A stretch of 64,000 bases of DNA, taken from NCBI GenBank assembly GCA_907165135.1, contig OU015569.1, forward strand, positions 8,370,001 to 8,434,000, given 5' to 3'. Origin of the DNA: Oikopleura dioica (taxonomy: Eukaryota > Animalia > Chordata). Made by a program: the position numbers and the translations under genes. A model generated the notes under the pieces. It worked only from the letters and a program-made list of their open reading frames with translations, was not told where the DNA came from and made no database searches. Shown in pieces: positions 8,464 through 18,803 of this stretch (position 1 is its first letter; the number at the start of each line of letters is the position of its first letter).

Positions 8464-8477
8464 TTAGGGTTAGGGTT
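8464..8477 (+). repeat. Short interstitial TTAGGG repeat (TTAGGGTTAGGGTT)
   Basis: Two and a third telomeric units, the same motif as the TIR at 12636. Confidence 0.5.
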
Positions 8478-8803: not shown

Positions 8804-11800
8804 ATGTGGTTTTTCACCACATTGTTTCTTGGTCTGTCTGCTTCAGGAAATGATAAAATCGAGATAATAGAGACACATACAGTATGTGACATATTAGATT
8901 TTGAATGTCCCGGCTTGAATAATAATCTTGCACCTCGATAATAACATTTAATAAGCGCCTAAGACCGATTCTATTGCGAATTTCAAGGATGAAGATCACT
9001 GGACCCGCGATAAAGCATCGTCAGCTTCACTCGACGAGTCCGTCTTACTTGGAGCGACTACTTCCGCTTTCCAAATTGAGGGAGCTCATCAAAGTGATGG
9101 CAAAGTCATGTCAATCATCGATACGTACATGCAAACTCTAGTGGAAAACGATGAGTTCTTTTATCCTCTCGATGCAGCTGATTCTTATAACAATGTGGAA
9201 AGAGATATTCAGAATCTTAAAGACATCGGTGCGAAGTCGTACTCATTCTCTATTGCTTCTACCCGTATTTTGGCAGACATCAATGGGGAAGCTAATCTTA
9301 AAGGACTTGAATACTATCGGGGTATTCTAGCGGATCTTAAGTCCAATGGAATTCTTCCAGTAGTTACGCTTATGGATGGAGATTACCCACAAGCAATCGA
9401 AGATAAAGGAAGAGTGAGCGATTAATAGAGATTCTTTTCTTTATAATTTCGATGAGATTGATAATCTTCATTCTTAAAAGGTGGAGTACGGGATCCTGTT
9501 TTTGTTGAGTACTTTGCTCAGTACTCGAAAATTATCTTCGACAATTTCGCGAACGACGCGGATATCAGCTGGGTGACGATCAACAATCCTCAAGACTTCT
9601 GCACGCTTGGTTTTACTGCACAAGCCGCACCAAATGCCACAGATATTGTCAGGAACTGTCTCGCTAACATTCTTATCGTACTAAGTACAAATATATTTTT
9701 GGTAAATTTAGGGCGACCCGGTGCACAGCGGACCCTACACTTGCGGCCACTTTATGCTTCTTGCTCACGCAAAGGCAGTTGAGCAGTTTCGAAACGGAAA
9801 CTTTCAGGGCAAAATTGGAATCAACCTTCTTGCACCATGGGGTGAACCAAGGAAGGCTTCGCAACTTTTTAGAATTTAGTTAATCCAAGCACTCGCTTAT
9901 CTTTTTCTTGTACGCAGAAGTTCAAGATATTCATTCGAGTATATTTTTGAAGCCAAGTAAACAGATCGTGGGAAGACGCGGAGCATGTTGATGCAGCTGT
10001 AAGATTCTTGGACTTTCGACTTGGCTGGATGGCTGAACCCATATTCGGTTCTGGAGATTACCCGGAGAATATGAAAATGTTGGTTGCAAAAAATAACCCT
10101 CCGGGAACTTTGCCTGAGTTCTCGGAAGAAGAGAAAGCTTTATTGCAAGGCTCAGCGGACTTCCTTGGACTTGATTACTATGGCGCATATGTGGTCCACA
10201 ACAATACAGCGTTGGTCGAGCGTGAATGTGCTTTCTTGTGCGACTCAGAAGTGCTCGTCATAGAAGACTGGAGGAGTAGATTTGACGAAGATGGAAGTCC
10301 AATTGTGTATTATGGTCTGAAGCGTGTTCTCAAGTATATCAAAGATACATTCAACAATCCTGAGATCTTCATAAACGAACTTGGTGCCAGCTTCACTGCT
10401 GACTACAATGATGTTCAACGAATAAATTTTCTGCAAGGGCATCTTAGTCAAATTCAACGAGCAAGAAGCGAATTCAGCGCACGGGTAACTCGCATCCATT
10501 TTTTCTCGCTTATGGACGGCCTGGAATATGAAAATGGTTTTTTACAGACTTATGGGCTTTTTAAAACAAACTACCTTGCAAGTGATAAGAGAACAAGCAT
10601 TCGTCGAACAGGAGAGTGGATTCGTGACTGGGATCGAAGTTTTCCTCAAGATGAGCGTCCGTCAGATTCTGTGAAGCTTGAGAATCTTTTCTTTGGCTCT
10701 GCAACTTCCGCCTTCCAGCACGAGTCAATCCTTGTCGCCGATAGAGCTTGGACTGTGTGGGACTTGATGGGCATTCGTGGGCCGCAGAATTCAGCGAATA
10801 TTTTAGATCACATGGAAGACGATGCTAAATTAATGAAGAAAATGAAAATGACCCATTACTTTTTTACAATTTCTTGGGCGCGAGTTTTCCGTAATGGATT
10901 CAACGAAACTGCAATGGCCGATCAGGAGATTCTCGATTTGTACAGAAAGTACATTGAAGTATTAAAAGCGAATGATATTATTCCTATCGTTGGTCTTTAC
11001 AATTGGGATCTTCCACGAGACGTCGTCTCAGAATTCGAGGGCTGGACTACTGATGAAGGAGTCGCTTCTTTTGTAAGATACGGAAAAGCAGTTGTAGATG
11101 AATACGGAGATCTGGTTGACTACTGGGTTACTCTTAATCAGCCACAGCGAGAATTAATGATGTCTTATGAACTTGGTTTAACACCACCAATGCGCCCGAT
11201 TGGTGCCCCGGGTGTTCAAGCTTACAAAGTCGCGAAAAATATGCTCCTTGGACATGCGGATATTTACAACTATTTCAAAAGCCGAAATTACCCAGGAAAA
11301 ATGGGGATTTCTCTCTCTGGCGATTTTCATATACCATTCAGCAAAACCGAAGACGACATCGCATCTGCCAAACTCGCGAATGAGTTTTTCATTGACTGGC
11401 TTCTTCACCCGCTTATTGATGGAAAATGGCCAGAATCAATGTCTGAAAATATACATCCTATTACCATTGGAGATGGACCCTCTATCAAACGGCTTCCAGC
11501 TATCACGATTCAAGAACAAAACAAACTCCGCGGCTCTTTTGATTTCCTGGGGGTCGAGCACGGAAACTACCGAATGACAGCTGCTGGAGAGCCGAAAACA
11601 GACATCAATGAGATTTCATATGCCGCGGATCGAAACGTTCAAGAAGTTCTCCCATGGAATTCGCAACAAACTTCAAATCTTCTTCAACGAGTTTCATATT
11701 CGAGTGAAACTGTTTATGACGTATTGAAATACATATCAAACCAGACCTCAAAACCTATCATCTTGATGTCAGGTATTGCCGGAGAGTCTGCAGCTATTGA

Positions 11801-12185
11801 TGCTCTAGAAAAACGAAGAGGGGGAATAGTAGACACTGCTCGCACAACTGACGAGATGATGATTCAATTTACAGAGGCTACAATTACCCAGCTAAGCAGA
11901 GCAAAACAAGAAGGCGTAAATGTTATTGGGTACATTCACTGGAATTTTGTTGACGGATACCAGTGGATAACTCAAAATGGAGAAGCTTGGGGACTTGTTG
12001 GACTTGACTGGAGCAACGCTTCTCGCGAAAGAATAGTGAAGCCTTTCGGAAACTGGTTCACCGAGTTTATTTCTAACTCTCTGAGTTCTAGGAGACCGGA
12101 ACGCGACTATCTTTCTACGGTTGGCAAAATCGACTACTGGGAAAGGAACCAGGCTCATAATGATAATATTTACGATCAATATTGA
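8804..12185 (+). CDS. GH1-A: secreted two-domain glycoside hydrolase family 1 protein (klotho/lactase-like), catalytic residues substituted
   Basis: Signal peptide MWFFTTLFLGLSASG at 8804. Domain 1: GATTSAFQIEG, WVTINNP, IFINELG. Domain 2: GSATSAFQHES, WVTLNQP, IILMSG. Introns ~8882-8963, 9409-9480, ~9648-9711, 9852-9964. No transmembrane segment. Confidence 0.85.
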
Positions 12186-12262: not shown

Positions 12263-15200
12263 ATGCTAGTATTTTATATATTAGTAGGATGTTTTTCGCA
12301 TGAAATGCGTCCAGAAAGAGAATTCTTGTTAGATATCCAAAAGCAAGACTACTGGCATCGGTAATTGATATTATCATTTTTTTATTTAAAACGTCATCAA
12401 TAAGCCTATCTTAGAGATCAAATTTATGTCGGAAAATTACCAAGTTCCTTTGGATTCGGTTCTGCAACTGCTTCTTACCAAGTAGAAGGAGCTTGGGATG
12501 AAGACGGCAAAGGAATGAATATTTGGGATTGGTGGGTGCGTTACCCAATAACTCTTCCTGACGGCAATGAAGCCGAAAGATGTCGAGTAATGAATTGTGA
12601 TACTGGTGACATTGCTTGCGACAGTTACCACAACATAGGGTTAGGGTCGCTTTCAAGAAGTTTTTATTTACAGACAGTATAAACAATTAAAGGGATTAAG
12701 AGAACTTCTCCACGCACTCGCTGGTCGAGCTCTGAAAAGGGCGCGCGAGAGTAGCGAGATCGATCAGCTGGGGCACACGCAAGTAACGATGTAGGAGACA
12801 ATATTAAAGCTAAGTAGCCCATCATGAGCAAAAAATGTCGGCCAAGGAATATCTACAAGGTCAATGAGGAATATTCCTGGAAGTAGTTCGTGTTGCAGAG
12901 CATCAAATTTGGACCATATTATCATGGTGTATGGACCATACGATATGGTCCATACCATACAGTAAGGTTAGGCAGTTCGGGTCAAGATGATTTTCAGATA
13001 AATTGAAAGTTTAGACTCAGTCTTGGTGGGTGGGAATATTAAGGGCTTGTCTGGTTTCTCTTATATTTTGGTTTCGATTTTTCGCCCTCTTTGGATTTTT
13101 CATCTCTTTGGATACGTTCACCGTCTCCAATCATCATGTTCTTATGGAAAGTTTTAGTCTCTCAGATCAGCTGGAAAAGGATAAAAGGTAATAAGAGATT
13201 AGATGGATGATTAAAAAAGACTTTTCAAACGGAAGAGAAGATCACAAGACAGCTGGATTAAAATTTGATTACAATAGGATGAACTTTGTCACCCGCTGGG
13301 GGCAAGCGAATCCCTCTTACCCCCATTATACCTACCGGGTGTGCCCATCTCCTACCGCGTTACTCGCGTGTGCCTCAGCTGCTCCACCCTCGCGCCTCTC
13401 GCGCGCCCTTTTAGAATTCCCTCTAGCGAGTGCGTGGAGAAGTTCTTTTTTCCCAATTAAAGAAGCATGTATAAAAATGAGCTGGATAGATAAACTTATC
13501 TGTCAAAAAATAGTCTTTCAAATTTCAATTTGACCCTAACCCTAATATTGCTCGAGATGTCCAAATGGCTAAAGACCTCAACTTAGGATATTACAGATTC
13601 TCCATCAACTGGGCTCGATTATTCCCTGATGGCTATGTTAACCACGAACCTTTAGACGGCGGAGTAAACTATTATAACAACCTTATCGATGCTCTTCTTG
13701 CTGAAGGCATCCAGCCTATGGTAACCTTGTTCCATTGGGACTTGCCACTCAAGCTTCAAGAAGACTTCGATGGATTTGACTCTCCAAATATTCAACAAAT
13801 TTTTGCTGACTATGCAGAAGTGTGCTTTATATTATTCGGCGACCGAGTAAAGCATTGGTTCACTTTCAATGAGCCACATAGCTACTGCTGGCAAGGACAT
13901 GACACAGGAATGTTCCCTCCTGGAATGGGTGATATTACTGGTCGCAACTACTATAAATGCGCACACAATATGATTTTGTCTCATGCCTATGCATACAAAA
14001 GATATCAAGACAATTACTCGTCTCAAGGAGGTCTAATTTCAATCACAATTGACGCATTCTGGGCTGAGCCTGCTGATAAATGGTCCGATGCTGACATTGA
14101 TGCTGCCCAACGTTACCTTGTGCATACTATTGCTCATTATGTAGAACCTTGTAGGAATATTTAAAAATAGTAAAAATTTATTTATTTTTTAAGTTTACAA
14201 TGGAGATTACCCTCCAGAAATGATAGAGCGAATTCAAAGAATTTCCTTGGCTGAAGGACTTGAAGAATCTCGACTCCCATCTTTTACTGAAGAGGAGAAA
14301 TCTGTACTGGAGGGCTCTATTGATTTCTACTCCCTACAGATGTATACTAGTCGAGAAGTTAGCGCCGTACCAGAAGACTCGCAAGCGTATTTAGATCTTA
14401 AGACAAAAGTGGAGAAATTTATTGAAGAAAATAAGGGTACAGAAAGAAAGGATCTTGCAGATCTCATTCAGGAATTGGCGTATTGGTTCCGTCCAGGATG
14501 GTATGGTGATATTGGCGCTTGGACAGCAGTCGACTTAGAATGGGAATCTGCGGAGTCTTCCTGGCTTCAGCATACTCCTTGGGGCCTGAGACGAATGCTT
14601 AATTGGGTTCACCTACGATTCCCTAACTCGGGTGGCATCTGGATAACTGAAAACGGATGGTCAGACACTGCAGACAAAACTGATCCACAACGATTTATGA
14701 ATATATATCAGAGCTTCAACGAAATTTTAAAAGCTATCGAGGTTGACGGAGTAGAAGTCCATGGAACGTGTATTTGGAGCTTGATGGACAACTTTGAATG
14801 GACAGCTGGTTACAACGATAGCTTCGGCATGTATCATGTTGAATTCGGAGAAGAAAATCCAGAAACTTGGGCGAAAACTTCTGTACCAAGAGTCGCTAAC
14901 CTGATTGCAGACCCTAGCTTTGAAGATCCAATGCAAATTCTCGAGGATACTTTCACTTTTGGATATTTCCCTGCCGATTTTGTTTGGGGAGGTTATTCAA
15001 ATGCCTACGAAACAGAAAAGAGAGGACAATCAGAGCAAACTGGAGAGACACTTTGGGATGTTCATCAAGTTCATTTAATAGAGAGTAGTGAAATCGAGCT
15101 CACGAATCAGTGGACGCCGCCAACTCTCGCAGCAGATACTTTAAATCACATCCGAGAAGATATACAAACCATCAAGGATCTTAAGTTAAAGTCCTACACA

Positions 15201-18200
15201 TTTTCTGTCTCTTGGAGTCGTCTCTTCCCTAATGATGACACCACATTGTCTACTTTTCAACTTGATAAATACGTTGAGCTCGCAGAAGGTCTCAAAAATG
15301 CAGGAATAGAACCAATTATTGCTCTCTACAATTGGGATATGCCTCAACGTTTCTTTGAAAATGGTGGAAATGGATGGGATGGAGATGTTGTTGGTCGCAT
15401 TCTACCGGCTTTCCGAGATTATACAGACGCAGTTGTGAAGGAATGGTTTCTCATATCAATTTAAAGCACTTAGTTCAACGATTATTATGTTCCAAGATAT
15501 AAAAGCAGAGTGAGAAATTTTGAAAAGGCCACGCGTCATGTCGTCAAGAAGTTTATTCCCTTCCAGAATGTTGGACGGGAAGTATTTGACGGATACACCG
15601 ATGTCAATTATCCCCCAAAGAGTGCAACATCTGAGAACTCTGCTCTTAGAGTATTTAGTGTAATTAGCAATATCTACCTCGGTCACATTGTTGCTCACAC
15701 TCAGGTCAGTCTTGAACGAAATCGAGCATATTTTGATTTCTATTACAAATAGATAAAACGAAACTGCGGAGACTGTGAAATTGGATTTGCTTTTGATCCT
15801 CACTCTTTTGTTATTCCAGCCGATGAAAACGACGCACTAGACGTAGCTGCCTCTCGACGATATAATGATTTTGTTTCTGGTTCTCTTCTTCTTCCGATGA
15901 CTGAAGGAAAATGGCCGGAATCCGTTACAGCTACCTTTCCGGATTTAAACCCTCCTTCCACAGTGAATGACCCCGGTCTCTTTGATTTCATTACTGTCAG
16001 CTATGAAACTACCGGACTCGCGACTTTCGCTGATGAAGTCTACTTAAAAGAAGGTGATGTTTCTACTTTGTCGTCACATGGAAATTTTTGGGATGCAGTT
16101 GGAGTAAAAGTATGTTATTTCGCATTAGAGCTCAAACCTCACATAGGGATTTTTTAAGAGATACAACGACTTCATAAGCTATCAATCAGCAAAGAAAGAA
16201 CAAAGATACAATCCAAAAGGCTTCCATGAATTCATCAACGCCTTCCTCCCAGAGAATCTTGGCAGTCAAAAATTCTCATTGAATATTGAATGGAGCAGTA
16301 CTTCGGATTATCCAACTAAACTAACAGGAGACTCTGTCATCCCTGAAGTCAATGAAGGATGGGGAATCGGCCGGTCTAAATATGTGAACGATGAGCATCA
16401 AATGTATTACTTCAGTACAACCATAAACCAGGTTCTTTATGCGGTCAAAACTGGCGTCTCAGTGACTGGTCTTTCTTTTAATGTTTTTGATAAATGGAAT
16501 TTCGGTTCAATGACACATACTGCCGACGGACTCGTTCGTGTGGACATGTCCAGCTCGAATCGTGAGCGAACAGTAAAAGACTCTGGTTGGTATCTTGCCG
16601 ATTTGATAGAAGTCAATGGGTATGAAGAGCGAAAACAGAATTGTTTCTACAAAGCAGAGCGGGATGATTTTTCGGGAGGAAGCTTTCCGGACGATTTCGA
16701 ATGGTCTCTCGCAACAGCATCTTATCAAATTGAGGGAGGCTGGGATGAGGATGGCAAGGGCTTGAACACTTGGGATGTGTTTTCGCACTGGCGCAAGAAC
16801 GATTCACTTGTCTCCGAAATTGAAATTGTTCCTGAGTGCAGAATCGATAACTGTGACAATGGTTCGTCTTAAAATTTATAAAGCTAGCATCTATTTTGAA
16901 TGTTTAGTATTCTTACAAATAGACTATTTGAAATAGTCAAAGTATAATTTCAGGTGATATCGCATGTGACTCTTATCATAAGTGGAGGGAAGACGTCCAA
17001 ATGATAAAAGATTTGGGAGTCACGCTCTATCGATTCTCACTCTCCTGGACACGAATTATTCCAACAGGCTATGTAGAGGATGGTATCAACCAAGCTGGAA
17101 TAGATTACTATAATAATCTTATCAACGAACTTATTGCAAACGGAATCGAGCCTGTCGTCACACTTTATCACTGGGATCTGCCTCAACAGTTGCATGACGA
17201 CTTCCGCGGTTGGCTGGATTATGAATCGGGCAAAATGGTAAAAGCGTTCGTTGACTTCTCCGATGTTGCCTTCAATGCCTTTGGCGATCGAGTCAAGCGA
17301 TGGATTACTCTTAACGAACCCGCAGTTCAGGCTCGAGAAGCCTATGGAACTGGAGAGATGGGTATGTGGAAACACCTAAAACATGAGGCTTATTTCATGA
17401 CTGATGATCAATAAAACTAGCGAACTATGATCTGCGATAAATCATCGTATAATAATCCGTTTTTCTAGCACCTGGATGGGTTGGACAACCTTACTGGTGT
17501 GGTCACACAATGTTACTCGCTCATGCAGAATCTTACCATCTGTACGACCAGAAATATCGCCAACAACAAGGAGGAATTATTGGTATCACTCTCAGCTCTG
17601 GATTCGCGGAAGGCCAACAACCTTGGGATCCTGAATATTGGCGATCAGCAATGTACGCAGTCGACTTTGATTTGGGTTGGTTTGCGGAGCCTATTTTTGG
17701 ATCAGGTAAAGGAAAAAGGCATGACCAGATATTAAAAAATTATAGGCGACTATCCGCAAAGAGTGAAAGACAAAAACGGAAACATTACTCTAAGCGATAT
17801 TATCCGTGATCTCGACGTTGATATCAAAGAATTGCCAAATTTCCCAGGAGATAATCTTGAGGCTCTCCAAGATTTCGTGCAAGAGTTTCTTGACACGTTT
17901 CTTCCTTCGTTTACAGAAGCACAAAAAGCAAGAATTCGCGGGTCATCAGATTTCTTTGGGTTAAATCACTATACGTCTAGTCTTTCTAAACCAAGTGATG
18001 GCTATCCAGGTCATGGAGGTGGTCATTGTTCTAACTGGCCAGACACAGGATCTGACTGGCTTCGACCAAATCCATGGGGATATCGAAAGCTTCTTCGCTA
18101 CATTAAGCAAGGGTTCCTACGCATTTATAAAGAAACATGCACTTTCATTCATTTTTTTTAATAAGATAAAGATATATAATAAGATAAAATAAGAATTCAT

Positions 18201-18803
18201 TATACATTCTATGCTTTAAAATATATCGAACTCTGATTCAAGCGAAAATGGAACAATCCACTTATTTATGTCACAGAAAATGGTGTCTCTGATCAAGAAG
18301 GGCCTGAAATAAATCTCGATGACAAGGCAAGAACAGACTTTTATCAAAATTACATTGGTCAAATGTTGCGCGCAATCAACGAAGACGATGTCAATGTTCG
18401 TATGTACACAGCGTGGTCATTGATGGATAACTTTGAGTGGGCAAGAGGATTCTCCGAACGCTTTGGATTACACTGGGTCGACTACACGGACCCAGAACGT
18501 CCTCGTTACAGGAAAGACTCTTCTTACTGCATTGAACATATCGCGCGAACGAACTCTGTGCCGGGTTCAAATACGACGGAGTATGAAACCTGTGGGAAGA
18601 ACTTGAAGGAGGGAGGAGTATCGACGGAAAATGACAACGATGTGAGTTATTTTCGCACATCCAAAAACGATAATATCAATAAGGATGACGGTCTCGGCGT
18701 TGGTGGAATCGTGGGTATCGCTGTCGGTTGCTTCCTGTTTGGCTCACTTCTGAGCTTCCTTCTCACCCGATTTTGCTGCCGTGATAAAGTCTCGTCTGCA
18801 TAA
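12263..18803 (+). CDS. GH1-B: type I membrane three-domain GH1 beta-glucosidase (lactase-phlorizin hydrolase-like), interrupted by a transposon at 12636-13544
   Basis: Exon 1 (12263-12360) reads [25 protein letters not shown], then GT-AG intron 12361-12414, then [21 protein letters not shown] in the first domain, degenerate middle domain, TLNEP/VTENG in the third. C-terminal [25 protein letters not shown]. Confidence 0.85.
12636..13544. mobile_element. Non-autonomous DNA transposon (MITE-like) with telomere-repeat-like TIRs
   Basis: TIRs TAGGGTTAGGGTC (12636-12648) and GACCCTAACCCTA (13532-13544). Diverged ~100 bp subterminal inverted repeats (~12701-12798 vs ~13348-13446). Central palindrome TATGGACCATA-cga-TATGGTCCATA at 12930-12954. 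Confidence 0.85.

What the first reader, a model, noticed from the sequence alone, without database searches (positions are those of the whole stretch)
12629..13567. Telomere-repeat-ended transposon sits mid-exon in GH1-B; in-frame removal needs non-canonical splice sites
Seen: DSYHN(I) is separated from (I)ARDVQM by a 909-bp element with (TTAGGG)2-like TIRs. The paralogous domain at ~16950 reads [12 protein letters not shown], so clean removal is required. The flanks are an imperfect direct repeat (AACAT / AATAT) and the subterminal arms have diverged, which suggests some age, yet the downstream ORFs stay open with catalytic motifs. The GT donors in the TIR are out of phase with the nearby AGs. 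In-frame options are AG..AT (12637-13548, restoring HNIARDVQM exactly) or GG..AG (12645-13556, giving HNIGLDVQM). Known: MITE-derived AG-AC/AG-AT introns are described in the appendicularian Fritillaria. Inference: a similar event may exist here.
Basis: partly seen in the sequence, partly recalled or inferred. Interest (0 to 1): 0.82.

Follow-up and report, generated by a model that had tools for sequence, protein, structure and literature searches.

The report
Nested insertions splitting a glycosidase exon
In the Okinawan tunicate Oikopleura dioica, a coding exon of a lactase-like enzyme gene is split by an older 139-base insert with hairpin ends, and a young jumping element has landed inside that insert; the gene still looks selected, so the insert is probably removed like an intron, but no RNA shows how.

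Summary
The sequence observation holds. A 13-base perfect inverted repeat made of telomere-like letters bounds 909 bases that interrupt a GH1 domain exactly where the family profile is continuous. Three related larvacean contigs read straight through this point.

The "909-bp transposon" is two nested insertions:
- The inner one is a 761-bp MITE with ~105-bp inverted ends and an 8-9-bp target duplication. It has about 10 copies in the genome and is absent from this site in an independent DNA run.
- The outer one is a 139-bp piece that carries the telomere-like ends. It is unique in the genome, belongs to no repeat family, and is present in both animals.

Scarless removal is possible only with non-G..AG ends (CAT|AG...TAT|). 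That matches the Fritillaria AG/AT signature. In-frame GT-AG, GG-AG and GA-AG options also exist, each leaving a small scar.

Downstream exons differ between the two insert-bearing haplotypes by 6 synonymous and 2 non-synonymous changes. This argues that the domain is still translated, so the outer piece probably acts as a stem-closed intron.

No RNA covered the locus, so the splice sites remain open. This scan has already reported exonic transposons and stem-closed non-GT introns elsewhere in this genome. This locus is a further, testable case.

The parts
12437..12635 (+). Upstream exon of GH1 domain B. The frame is open from 12404 and the exon ends ...[10 protein letters not shown](I).
   Evidence: Pfam GH1 profile positions 5-60, E=4e-16; translation.
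12636..12648 (+). Left 13-base terminal inverted repeat, TAGGGTTAGGGTC (telomere-like).
   Evidence: Perfect complement of 13532-13544 (I4). 0.04 matches to the 13-mer expected by chance in the window, 3 found (one of them a 1-mismatch copy at 8465).
12636..12692 (+). Left 57 bases of the older outer insert. If unspliced, the frame runs into a stop at 12680.
   Evidence: Present without change in the run X3 contig that lacks the inner MITE; stop position.
12684..12692 (.). Target-site duplication of the inner MITE, copy 1 (CAATTAAAG).
   Evidence: Identical 9-mer at 13454-13462. The X3 joint has 9 letters that fit both sides.
12693..13453 (.). Inner non-autonomous DNA transposon (MITE), 761 bp, with ~105-bp imperfect inverted ends beginning GGATTAAGAGAACTTCTCC. 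It is young and polymorphic.
   Evidence: About 10 genomic copies, the closest 96-99% identical. 8-9-bp duplications flank 6 other copies. Absent at this site in run X3. No Pfam or Rfam hit inside.
13454..13462 (.). Target-site duplication of the inner MITE, copy 2.
13463..13544 (+). Right 82 bases of the older outer insert. It holds the AG at 13512-13 and the branch-point-like CTAAC at 13536-40; the CTAAT at 13542-46 overlaps its end.
   Evidence: Unique in the genome. One difference in X3, at 13487. Sequence.
13532..13544 (+). Right 13-base terminal inverted repeat, GACCCTAACCCTA.
   Evidence: It pairs with 12636-12649 in the predicted RNA fold of both alleles.
13547..14164 (+). Downstream exon of GH1 domain B ([11 protein letters not shown]...), which holds the NEP acid/base motif.
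   Evidence: Pfam GH1 profile positions 60-252, E=3.6e-59. Differences from X3 in this exon are 3 synonymous and 1 non-synonymous; with the next exon the count is 6 and 2.
12637..13548 (+). Candidate scarless intron, CAT|AG...TAT| (912 nt here, 142 nt in the MITE-free allele). It restores HNIARDVQM. The same product comes from 12635-13546 or 12636-13547.
   Evidence: Enumeration. Three relatives read HNV[E/N]RDV at this point.
12645..13556 (+). Candidate Oikopleura-type GG-AG intron giving HNIGLDVQM. The sister option 12639-13556 gives HNIDVQM.
   Evidence: AG 13555-56 lies 12 nt after the stem and 11 or 17 nt after CTAAT or CTAAC. The same gene has a GG-AG intron two bases upstream of an out-of-frame GT.
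12677..13513 (+). Candidate canonical GT-AG intron inside the insert (67 nt in the MITE-free allele). It would leave 25 extra residues in the protein.
   Evidence: The donor is weak on a position-weight matrix built from this window's own introns: score -0.4 against a training mean of 7.6.

Best explanation
The interruption consists of two nested insertions of different age in a coding exon of a multi-domain, membrane-anchored GH1 (lactase-like) gene of Oikopleura dioica from Okinawa.

First, a unique 139-base piece entered the exon. With 3 extra bases it adds 142 nt. Its ends are a perfect 13-base inverted repeat of telomere-like sequence, and it sits between the codons for HNI and ARD.

Later, in the reference haplotype only, a 761-bp miniature DNA transposon jumped into that piece and made an 8-9-bp target duplication.

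I infer that the outer piece now behaves as a lineage-specific intron. Its two ends are clamped by the 13-14-bp RNA stem, and it is removed in frame, so domain B stays functional and the inner transposon is harmless intronic cargo.

Which bonds are cut is not shown. There are two leading options:
- An Oikopleura-type G..AG intron that uses the AG at 13555-56, most likely GG at 12645 or 12639. This leaves a two-residue scar.
- A scarless Fritillaria-like CAT|AG...TAT| excision.

The nested structure, its polymorphism, the uniqueness of the outer piece and the absence of the insert in relatives are shown. The splicing is inferred.
For: Nesting and relative age:
- Other genomic copies match only the inner part.
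- Target duplications of 8-9 bp flank this copy and 6 others.
- A 7.4-kb contig of the independent DNA run X3 joins 12683 to 13454 and keeps the outer piece with a single change.

The outer piece is a singleton:
- Its right 82 bases have no other match in the genome.
- The other 25 genomic copies of the 13-mer have unrelated neighbours and no partner in the 1.5 kb fetched on each side, except one degenerate pair at L046.
- The 9-base core of the repeat occurs at chance level, 265 against 262 for the control.

The insertion entered a previously continuous exon:
- The Pfam GH1 profile is continuous across the site at position 60.
- Three related larvacean contigs read CDSYHNV[E/N]RDV without a break.
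- The closest of them has domain B as its best match in this genome, 62% against 45% for the next.

The domain is still constrained:
- Between the two insert-bearing haplotypes, the exons after the insert differ at 6 synonymous and 2 non-synonymous sites, over 287 and 1108 sites.
- This gives pN/pS of about 0.09 and a binomial p of about 0.0015 by my arithmetic.
- The insert itself has gained one substitution and a transposon, so it is not brand new.
- The NEP and TENG catalytic motifs are intact.

The stem:
- The predicted fold of both alleles closes the insert with the 14-bp helix; z=-4.4 for the short allele.

Precedent in the same gene:
- Three introns are placed by homology as GA-AG 9852-9964, GA-AG 15441-15527 and GG-AG 18111-18242.
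- Each has a 5-7-bp terminal stem that starts 0-4 nt inside the 5' end and ends 8-10 nt before the 3' end.
- Here the AG at 13555-56 lies 12 nt after the stem, with CTAAT and CTAAC just upstream.
- About 11% of introns in this assembly are non-GT/AG (PMC8008620).
Against: - No RNA evidence. The two raw RNA runs laid gave no real coverage. The RNA or possible-RNA runs listed under the species label that are indexed hold none of the gene's words.
- None of the candidate sites looks good on a matrix built from this window's own GT-AG introns. In-frame GT donors score -0.4 to 4.6 against a training mean of 7.6, and both AGs score about 2 against 6.7.
- The two best GTs (12640, 12646) are out of frame and would give a frameshift.
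- No G-starting donor lies 0-6 nt upstream of the full stem, so the geometry seen in the three neighbouring non-GT introns is not reproduced exactly.
- The selection test rests on 8 differences from one other sample. Some of these may predate the insertion if recombination has shuffled them.
- The two animals may come from one laboratory culture.
Confidence: 0.6

Rival explanations
1. One reading: the insert is removed without a scar as a Fritillaria-type AG/AT intron (12637-13548). It is recognised through the YAY|AG...YAY| context and the terminal stem, and it restores HNIARDVQM.
For: - It is the only excision that leaves the protein unchanged, and relatives read HNV[E/N]RDV there.
- The flanks are CAT|AG and TAT|. 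They fit the YAY signature reported for AG/AC and AG/AT introns (PMC13326754, section 21; PMC11282704).
- The stem starts at the first intron base and ends 5 nt before the cut.
- An earlier, unchecked note of this scan (s1-342417) reports an Oikopleura intron without an AG end that is cut out exactly in RNA.
Against: - Published non-canonical introns of O. dioica are mainly GA-AG (PMC7072748).
- In Fritillaria, use of 3' AC/AT ends goes with extra U2AF paralogues reported for that lineage (PMC13326754).
- The outer piece belongs to no MITE family.
- No cDNA is available.
Confidence: 0.18
2. A canonical GT-AG intron inside the insert (12677-13513; 67 nt in the short allele) is used. The two ends of the insert are translated, adding 25 residues ([14 protein letters not shown] + [11 protein letters not shown]) to helix 1 of the domain.
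For: - Both flanking stretches are open in the right frames and the phases match.
- The intron size is typical for this genome, whose median is 49 nt (PMC8008620).
- The inner MITE and the only substitution in the insert (13487) both fall inside this intron.
Against: - The donor ACA|GTATAA scores -0.4, and 78% of all GTs in the window score at least as high. The acceptor also scores low.
- 25 residues in the conserved YH...RDV stretch, where the GH1 profile has no gap, are unlikely to be neutral.
Confidence: 0.13
3. The insert is simply disruptive. Transcripts keep it and stop at 12680, or they are cut at the strong out-of-frame GTs in the left repeat. Domain B, or the whole gene, is then dead or dying on these chromosomes.
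For: - The best-scoring donors (12640 at 5.9, 12646 at 4.9) are out of frame, and all in-frame sites are weak.
- No transcript evidence exists for the gene in any run found.
- A second transposon has accumulated in the same spot.
- Earlier follow-ups in this scan judged several exonic transposons of this genome to be ordinary segregating insertion alleles.
Against: - 6 synonymous against 2 non-synonymous differences lie downstream on two insert-bearing haplotypes.
- The catalytic motifs and all downstream frames are intact.
- The outer piece is in both samples, and no empty-site contig was seen in X3.
- The insert carries its own substitution, so it is not very recent.
Confidence: 0.3
4. An alternative for the origin only. 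The outer piece is not a transposon but filler DNA captured during repair of a double-strand break whose two ends had each been extended by telomerase. This would explain why the telomere G-strand runs inward from both flanks.
For: - The orientation fits: TAGGGTTAGGG follows the left flank on the top strand and the right flank on the bottom strand.
- The piece is a singleton without a family or a standard target duplication.
- Short interstitial telomere-like runs are common in this genome: 27 copies of the 13-mer against 0-1 for the control.
- Gain of introns through break repair has been proposed in other animals (PMC3443670).
Against: - The two arms are identical through the 13th base, a C that is not telomeric, and they are equal in length. 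Independent telomerase additions would rarely produce this.
- The 3-base imperfect flank repeat (ACA/ATA) fits a staggered cut by a transposase equally well.
Confidence: 0.15

Closest known systems
MITE-derived non-canonical AG/AC and AG/AT introns of Fritillaria borealis (Henriet et al. 2019, as summarised in PMC11282704; PMC13326754)
   Same: - The host is also a larvacean.
- The position in a conserved exon is lineage-specific.
- The ends are inverted repeats.
- The scarless option begins with AG and ends with AT.
- A YAY triplet lies before the 5' cut and forms the last three intron bases (CAT / TAT).
   Different: - The outer piece has no family of copies.
- The host is Oikopleura, where published non-canonical introns are mainly GA-AG, and where the extra U2AF paralogues of Fritillaria are not reported.
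- Splicing is not shown.
- G..AG alternatives exist.
G(non-T)-AG non-canonical introns of Oikopleura dioica (about 11-12% of introns; PMC8008620, PMC7072748), and the stem-closed subclass noted repeatedly by this scan
   Same: - Same genome.
- A terminal stem closes the insert.
- An AG with branch-point-like CTAAT/CTAAC lies 12 nt past the stem, close to the 8-10 nt seen in three non-GT introns of the same gene.
- In-frame GG-AG and GA-AG pairs exist.
   Different: - No G..AG pair removes the insert without changing the protein.
- The in-frame G donors lie inside or beyond the 5' arm of the stem instead of just upstream of it.
- The stem is far longer (13-14 bp against 5-7 bp).
Introners: DNA transposons that create canonical introns using their target duplication (Micromonas, dinoflagellates and others; PMC11282704)
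   Same: An insertion into a coding exon that seems to be tolerated because it can be spliced, with inverted-repeat ends.
   Different: - No multi-copy family.
- No GT...AG built from the element plus its duplication.
- The exact excision is non-canonical.
Mutator-like or hAT-like miniature transposons (for the inner 761-bp element)
   Same: - Long inverted ends (~105 bp).
- An 8-9-bp target duplication.
- No coding capacity.
- A low-copy family with near-identical members.
- Presence/absence polymorphism.
   Different: No autonomous partner with a transposase was found among the hits, so the superfamily is not settled.
Nonconventional introns of euglenids (PMC3935182, PMC12501133)
   Same: The borders are variable and non-canonical, and an RNA secondary structure brings the two intron ends together.
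   Different: The organism is unrelated, and nothing here shows such a mechanism. It is an analogy only.

Membership tests
Fritillaria-type MITE-derived AG/AT intron | Lineage-specific position inside an otherwise continuous conserved exon | tested here: met
   The GH1 profile is continuous at position 60. Three relatives are uninterrupted.
Fritillaria-type MITE-derived AG/AT intron | AG at the 5' end and AT or AC at the 3' end, with a YAY triplet before the 5' cut and as the last three intron bases | tested here: met
   CAT|AG at 12634-12638 and TAT| at 13546-13548 for the scarless option. The signature is taken from PMC13326754, section 21.
Fritillaria-type MITE-derived AG/AT intron | Terminal inverted repeats | tested here: met
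   A 13-bp perfect inverted repeat.
Fritillaria-type MITE-derived AG/AT intron | The element belongs to a multi-copy MITE family | tested here: not met
   The right 82 bases have no other genomic match. The other sites of the 13-mer are unrelated. The 9-mer core occurs at chance level.
Fritillaria-type MITE-derived AG/AT intron | Exact removal seen in cDNA | not testable with these tools
   RNA runs X14 and X16 gave no real coverage, and the single read-laying run is spent.
Oikopleura G(non-T)-AG stem-closed intron | Starts with G, ends with AG, and keeps the frame | tested here: inconclusive
   In-frame pairs exist: GG 12639 or 12645, GA 12657, GT 12624 or 12660, each with AG 13556. Every one alters 2-9 residues and none is scarless.
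Oikopleura G(non-T)-AG stem-closed intron | A short stem a few bases inside both cut sites | tested here: inconclusive
   A 13-14-bp stem is present. The AG at 13556 is 12 nt past it, against 8-10 nt in three same-gene examples. No G lies 0-6 nt upstream of the 5' arm.
Introner (canonical transposon-made intron) | GT...AG supplied by the element and its target duplication, giving exact removal | tested here: not met
   No GT-AG pair restores the ancestral reading.
MITE of a cut-and-paste DNA transposon (inner 761-bp element) | Inverted ends, a target-site duplication, several copies, and an empty site in another genome | tested here: met
   Inverted ends are 76-86% complementary over ~105 bp. 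Duplications of 8-9 bp flank 7 copies. There are about 10 copies. The empty site is seen in run X3.
MITE of a cut-and-paste DNA transposon (inner 761-bp element) | An autonomous partner that shares the ends and encodes a transposase | tested here: inconclusive
   All 20 hits to the terminal 108 bases lie in elements of 0.66-1.6 kb. No transposase search was run.
Telomerase-healed break with captured filler | Telomeric G-strand extends from each flank, with independent lengths and junctions | tested here: inconclusive
   The orientation fits. But both arms are identical through a non-telomeric 13th base, which favours one palindromic origin.

The most novel reading that the evidence does not exclude
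Oikopleura dioica has no report of the extra U2AF paralogues of Fritillaria. It may nevertheless cut out a hairpin-clamped insertion exactly at CAT|AG...TAT|. In that case Fritillaria-style AG/AT splicing, guided by a terminal stem and not by GT/AG, would exist outside the Fritillariidae. It would let arbitrary hairpin-ended DNA, not only MITE families, become an intron at the moment of insertion.
Probability: 0.18. Interest if true: 0.8.

Novelty: new member of a known kind. Interest (0 to 1): 0.5.

Why it matters
Larvaceans gain introns faster than any other animals, and the mechanism is debated. This locus shows two steps in one place. One is an insertion old enough to be shared and to have mutated. 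The other is a fresh, still segregating transposon inside it.

The shared insert cannot be removed without a scar by any GT-AG or G..AG rule, yet the exons behind it still look selected. One RT-PCR on Okinawan animals would therefore show which rule Oikopleura applies to a hairpin-ended insertion:
- scarless AG/AT, as in Fritillaria;
- its own GG-AG type, leaving a scar;
- or none.

Animals with and without the inner transposon also give a natural test of how a 770-base addition affects that splicing.

Tried and rejected
- RNA evidence. Read laying on two raw oligo-dT RNA runs of the species label (X14, X16) laid 1 and 0 reads, which is no test. X4, which I had hoped was RNA, laid only repeat pieces. 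The word search with the downstream exon found nothing above 63% identity. Exact look-ups of three window ORFs found nothing on record. Records of this genome appear to be withheld.\n- Repeat family for the outer piece. I searched with the right arm, the 13-mer and the 9-mer core. No family was found. One other inverted telomere-like pair (L046) flanks unrelated sequence that includes a high-copy 160-bp MITE.\n- Similarity of the outer arms beyond the 13-mer: none.\n- Rfam and Pfam inside the insert: nothing.\n- An unsupervised search for non-GT introns across the window was too noisy to give a register. The short allele folded is the natural MITE-free allele seen in run X3, built inside a script from window coordinates.
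Full report
**Where the window comes from.** The window is G000:C2:8370001-8434000 of a 64.28-Mb assembly in 19 contigs. This matches the published OKI2018_I69 assembly of Oikopleura dioica from Okinawa: 64.3 Mbp, 19 scaffolds, median intron 49 bp, 11% non-GT/AG introns (PMC8008620).

**The gene.** It runs on the + strand from about 9.1 kb to 18.8 kb. It consists of a chain of GH1 (glycoside hydrolase 1) domains and ends in a hydrophobic anchor, like lactase-phlorizin hydrolase. Domain B, the one interrupted, keeps the NEP and TENG catalytic motifs.

**Check of the observation.** TAGGGTTAGGGTC lies at 12636-12648 and its exact complement at 13532-13544. Chance would give 0.04 matches to the 13-mer in the window. 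The upstream frame reads ...[11 protein letters not shown], and the downstream frame resumes with [11 protein letters not shown] at 13547.

Pfam's GH1 profile aligns the upstream piece up to position 60 and the downstream piece from position 60. The 912 extra bases therefore sit at a point where the fold has no gap. The paralogous domain reads [12 protein letters not shown] without a break there. Its nearest intron is a plain GT-AG intron 15 codons upstream.

**Comparison with relatives.** Three contigs from related larvaceans read straight through the site:
- L059, a Logan contig, reads CDSYHNVERDV.
- L060, an ENA metagenome contig carrying the same multi-domain gene, reads CDSYHNVERDV.
- L067, a JGI contig, reads CDSYHNVNRDV.

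The L059 protein has domain B as its best match in this genome, 62% against 45% for the next. The insertion is therefore real and specific to this lineage.

**The 909 bases are two nested events.**
- Other genomic copies match only positions ~55-820 of the 909.
- Inside the piece, CAATTAAAG occurs at 12684-12692 and again at 13454-13462. It flanks a 761-bp element whose ends (GGATTAAGAGAACTTCTCC... / GGAAAAAAGAACTTCTCC...) are ~105-bp imperfect inverted repeats.
- Six other copies are flanked by 8-9-bp duplications.
- The family has about ten members of 0.66-1.6 kb, the closest 96-99% identical. None has coding capacity.
- In an independent DNA run (X3, another study and another species label), a 7.4-kb contig joins 12683 directly to 13454, with 9 letters fitting both sides. 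That animal therefore lacks the inner element and carries the outer piece with one substitution, at 13487.

The inner MITE is young and segregating.

**The outer piece.** It is 57 + 82 = 139 bases. Compared with the ancestral reading, 142 bases were added, which leaves an imperfect 3-base flank repeat (ACA/ATA, or CAT/TAT).
- Its right arm has no other match in the genome.
- The 13-mer occurs 27 times genome-wide against 0-1 for the control. The other 25 sites are short interstitial telomere-like runs with unrelated neighbours and no inverted partner in the 1.5 kb fetched on each side, apart from one degenerate pair at L046.
- The 9-base core is at chance level.
- Beyond the 13-mer the two arms are not alike.

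So it is a hairpin-ended singleton, and I cannot call it a member of any transposon family. A break-repair origin with telomerase-extended ends fits the orientation. It fits poorly with the two arms being identical through a non-telomeric 13th base.

**Whether the domain is still used.** If unspliced, the frame stops at 12680. Between the two insert-bearing haplotypes, the exons after the insert differ at 6 synonymous and 2 non-synonymous sites, over 287 and 1108 sites. This gives pN/pS of about 0.09. By my arithmetic, the chance of at least 6 of 8 being synonymous under neutrality is about 0.0015.

The insert has itself gained a substitution and a transposon, so it is about as old as the haplotype split. 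The test is small, and recombination could have brought in older variants. It nevertheless argues for continued translation of domain B, and hence for in-frame removal of the insert.

**Which splice sites could remove it.** Enumeration gives these options.

| Option | Coordinates | Product |
|---|---|---|
| Scarless AG..AT (same as TA..TA or AT..AT one or two bases to the left) | 12637-13548 | HNIARDVQM restored |
| GT-AG | 12677-13513 | 25 extra residues |
| GT-AG | 12660-13556 | altered ([14 protein letters not shown]) |
| GT-AG | 12624-13556 | loses SYHNIAR |
| GG-AG | 12645-13556 | HNIGLDVQM |
| GG-AG | 12639-13556 | HNIDVQM |
| GA-AG | 12657-13556 | altered ([13 protein letters not shown]) |

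I built a matrix from about 30 GT-AG introns of this window and scored the sites:
- The in-frame GTs score -0.4 to 4.6, against a training mean of 7.6.
- Both AGs score about 2, against a training mean of 6.7.
- The best GTs (12640, 12646) are out of frame.

No option is convincing on sequence alone.

**Structure.** Both alleles are predicted to close the insert with a 14-bp helix, extended by CAA/UUG in the exons.

**Precedent in the same gene.** Earlier notes of this scan (s1-378084, s1-322894, s1-360582 and others) describe non-GT introns of this genome as closed by a short stem. I tested this on the present gene. Homology places three non-GT introns:
- GA-AG at 9852-9964.
- GA-AG at 15441-15527. 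This placement gives a gapless alignment to domain B, whereas the GT-AG alternative adds 8 residues.
- GG-AG at 18111-18242. The GT two bases downstream is out of frame.

Each has a 5-7-bp stem containing G-C pairs. The stem starts 0-4 nt inside the 5' end and ends 8-10 nt before the 3' end. Fifteen GT-AG introns show only scattered AT-rich matches, with one exception.

At the finding, the AG at 13555-56 lies 12 nt after the stem, with CTAAT and CTAAC just upstream. No G lies just before the 5' arm, so the geometry is only half met.

**Comparison with what is known.** The scarless option reads CAT|AG...TAT|. This is the YAY|AG...YAY| signature reported for the AG/AC and AG/AT introns of Fritillaria borealis, which carry inverted repeats and target duplications and are thought to come from MITEs (PMC13326754, section 21; PMC11282704).

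Three points count against membership. The outer piece has no family. Published non-canonical introns of O. dioica are mainly GA-AG (PMC7072748). Use of 3' AC/AT ends in Fritillaria goes with U2AF paralogues of that lineage (PMC13326754).

**Odds.**
- About 0.6-0.7 that the insert is removed in frame. Of this, roughly 0.3 goes to a G..AG cut at 13556, 0.18 to the scarless cut and 0.13 to the internal GT-AG.
- About 0.3 that the allele is simply disruptive.

**Limits.**
- No RNA covered the locus.
- Only two animals were compared.
- Records of this genome are withheld from the protein tools.
- This scan has already reported exonic transposons and stem-closed non-GT introns on other DNA of this genome. 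This case adds three things: the nested two-age structure, a shared insert with no scarless G..AG solution, and a first hint of selection.

Noticed in passing
window 9852-9964, 15441-15527, 18111-18242: Three introns of the same GH1 gene are best placed by homology as GA-AG, GA-AG and GG-AG. Each has a 5-7-bp terminal stem (GGCTTC/GAAGCC, TTTCTCA/TGAGAAA, GGGTTC/GAACTC) that ends 8-10 nt before the 3' AG. In the third, a GT two bases downstream is out of frame.
   Followed up: partly
genome-wide; L031-L057; L046:1490-2731: The telomere-like 13-mer occurs 27 times against 0-1 for the control, as short interstitial runs on all large contigs. Several lie next to a ~160-bp palindromic MITE with more than 100 copies (L046:2542-2703). 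At L046 two telomere-like runs face each other 1.2 kb apart.
   Followed up: partly
window 8465-8477: A further telomere-like run (TAGGGTTAGGGTT) lies a few hundred bases upstream of the first GH1 exons of this gene.
   Followed up: no
window 15528-15600: The GH1 domain after domain B reads FIPFQNV where the acid/base motif NEP should be, so it is probably catalytically dead. Domains B and C keep NEP and TENG. This is a lactase-like mix of live and dead domains with a C-terminal membrane anchor (18363-18803).
   Followed up: partly
window 11802-12185: In the tail of the long upstream GH1 open frame, run X3 differs at 1 synonymous and 2 non-synonymous sites, unlike the exons after the insert. 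Part of this tail may be intronic, as another note on this window (s1-534541) suggests.
   Followed up: no
L060 (ENA ERZ508537 NODE_871), L059, L067: Marine metagenome and Logan contigs carry the same multi-domain GH1 gene from a related larvacean, 61-63% identical in domain B. They are useful for mapping intron turnover across the whole gene.
   Followed up: partly
window 12929-12955: The inner MITE holds a perfect 12-bp palindrome pair (GTATGGACCATA / TATGGTCCATAC) separated by 3 bases, inside a short run of ACCATA-type repeats.
   Followed up: no
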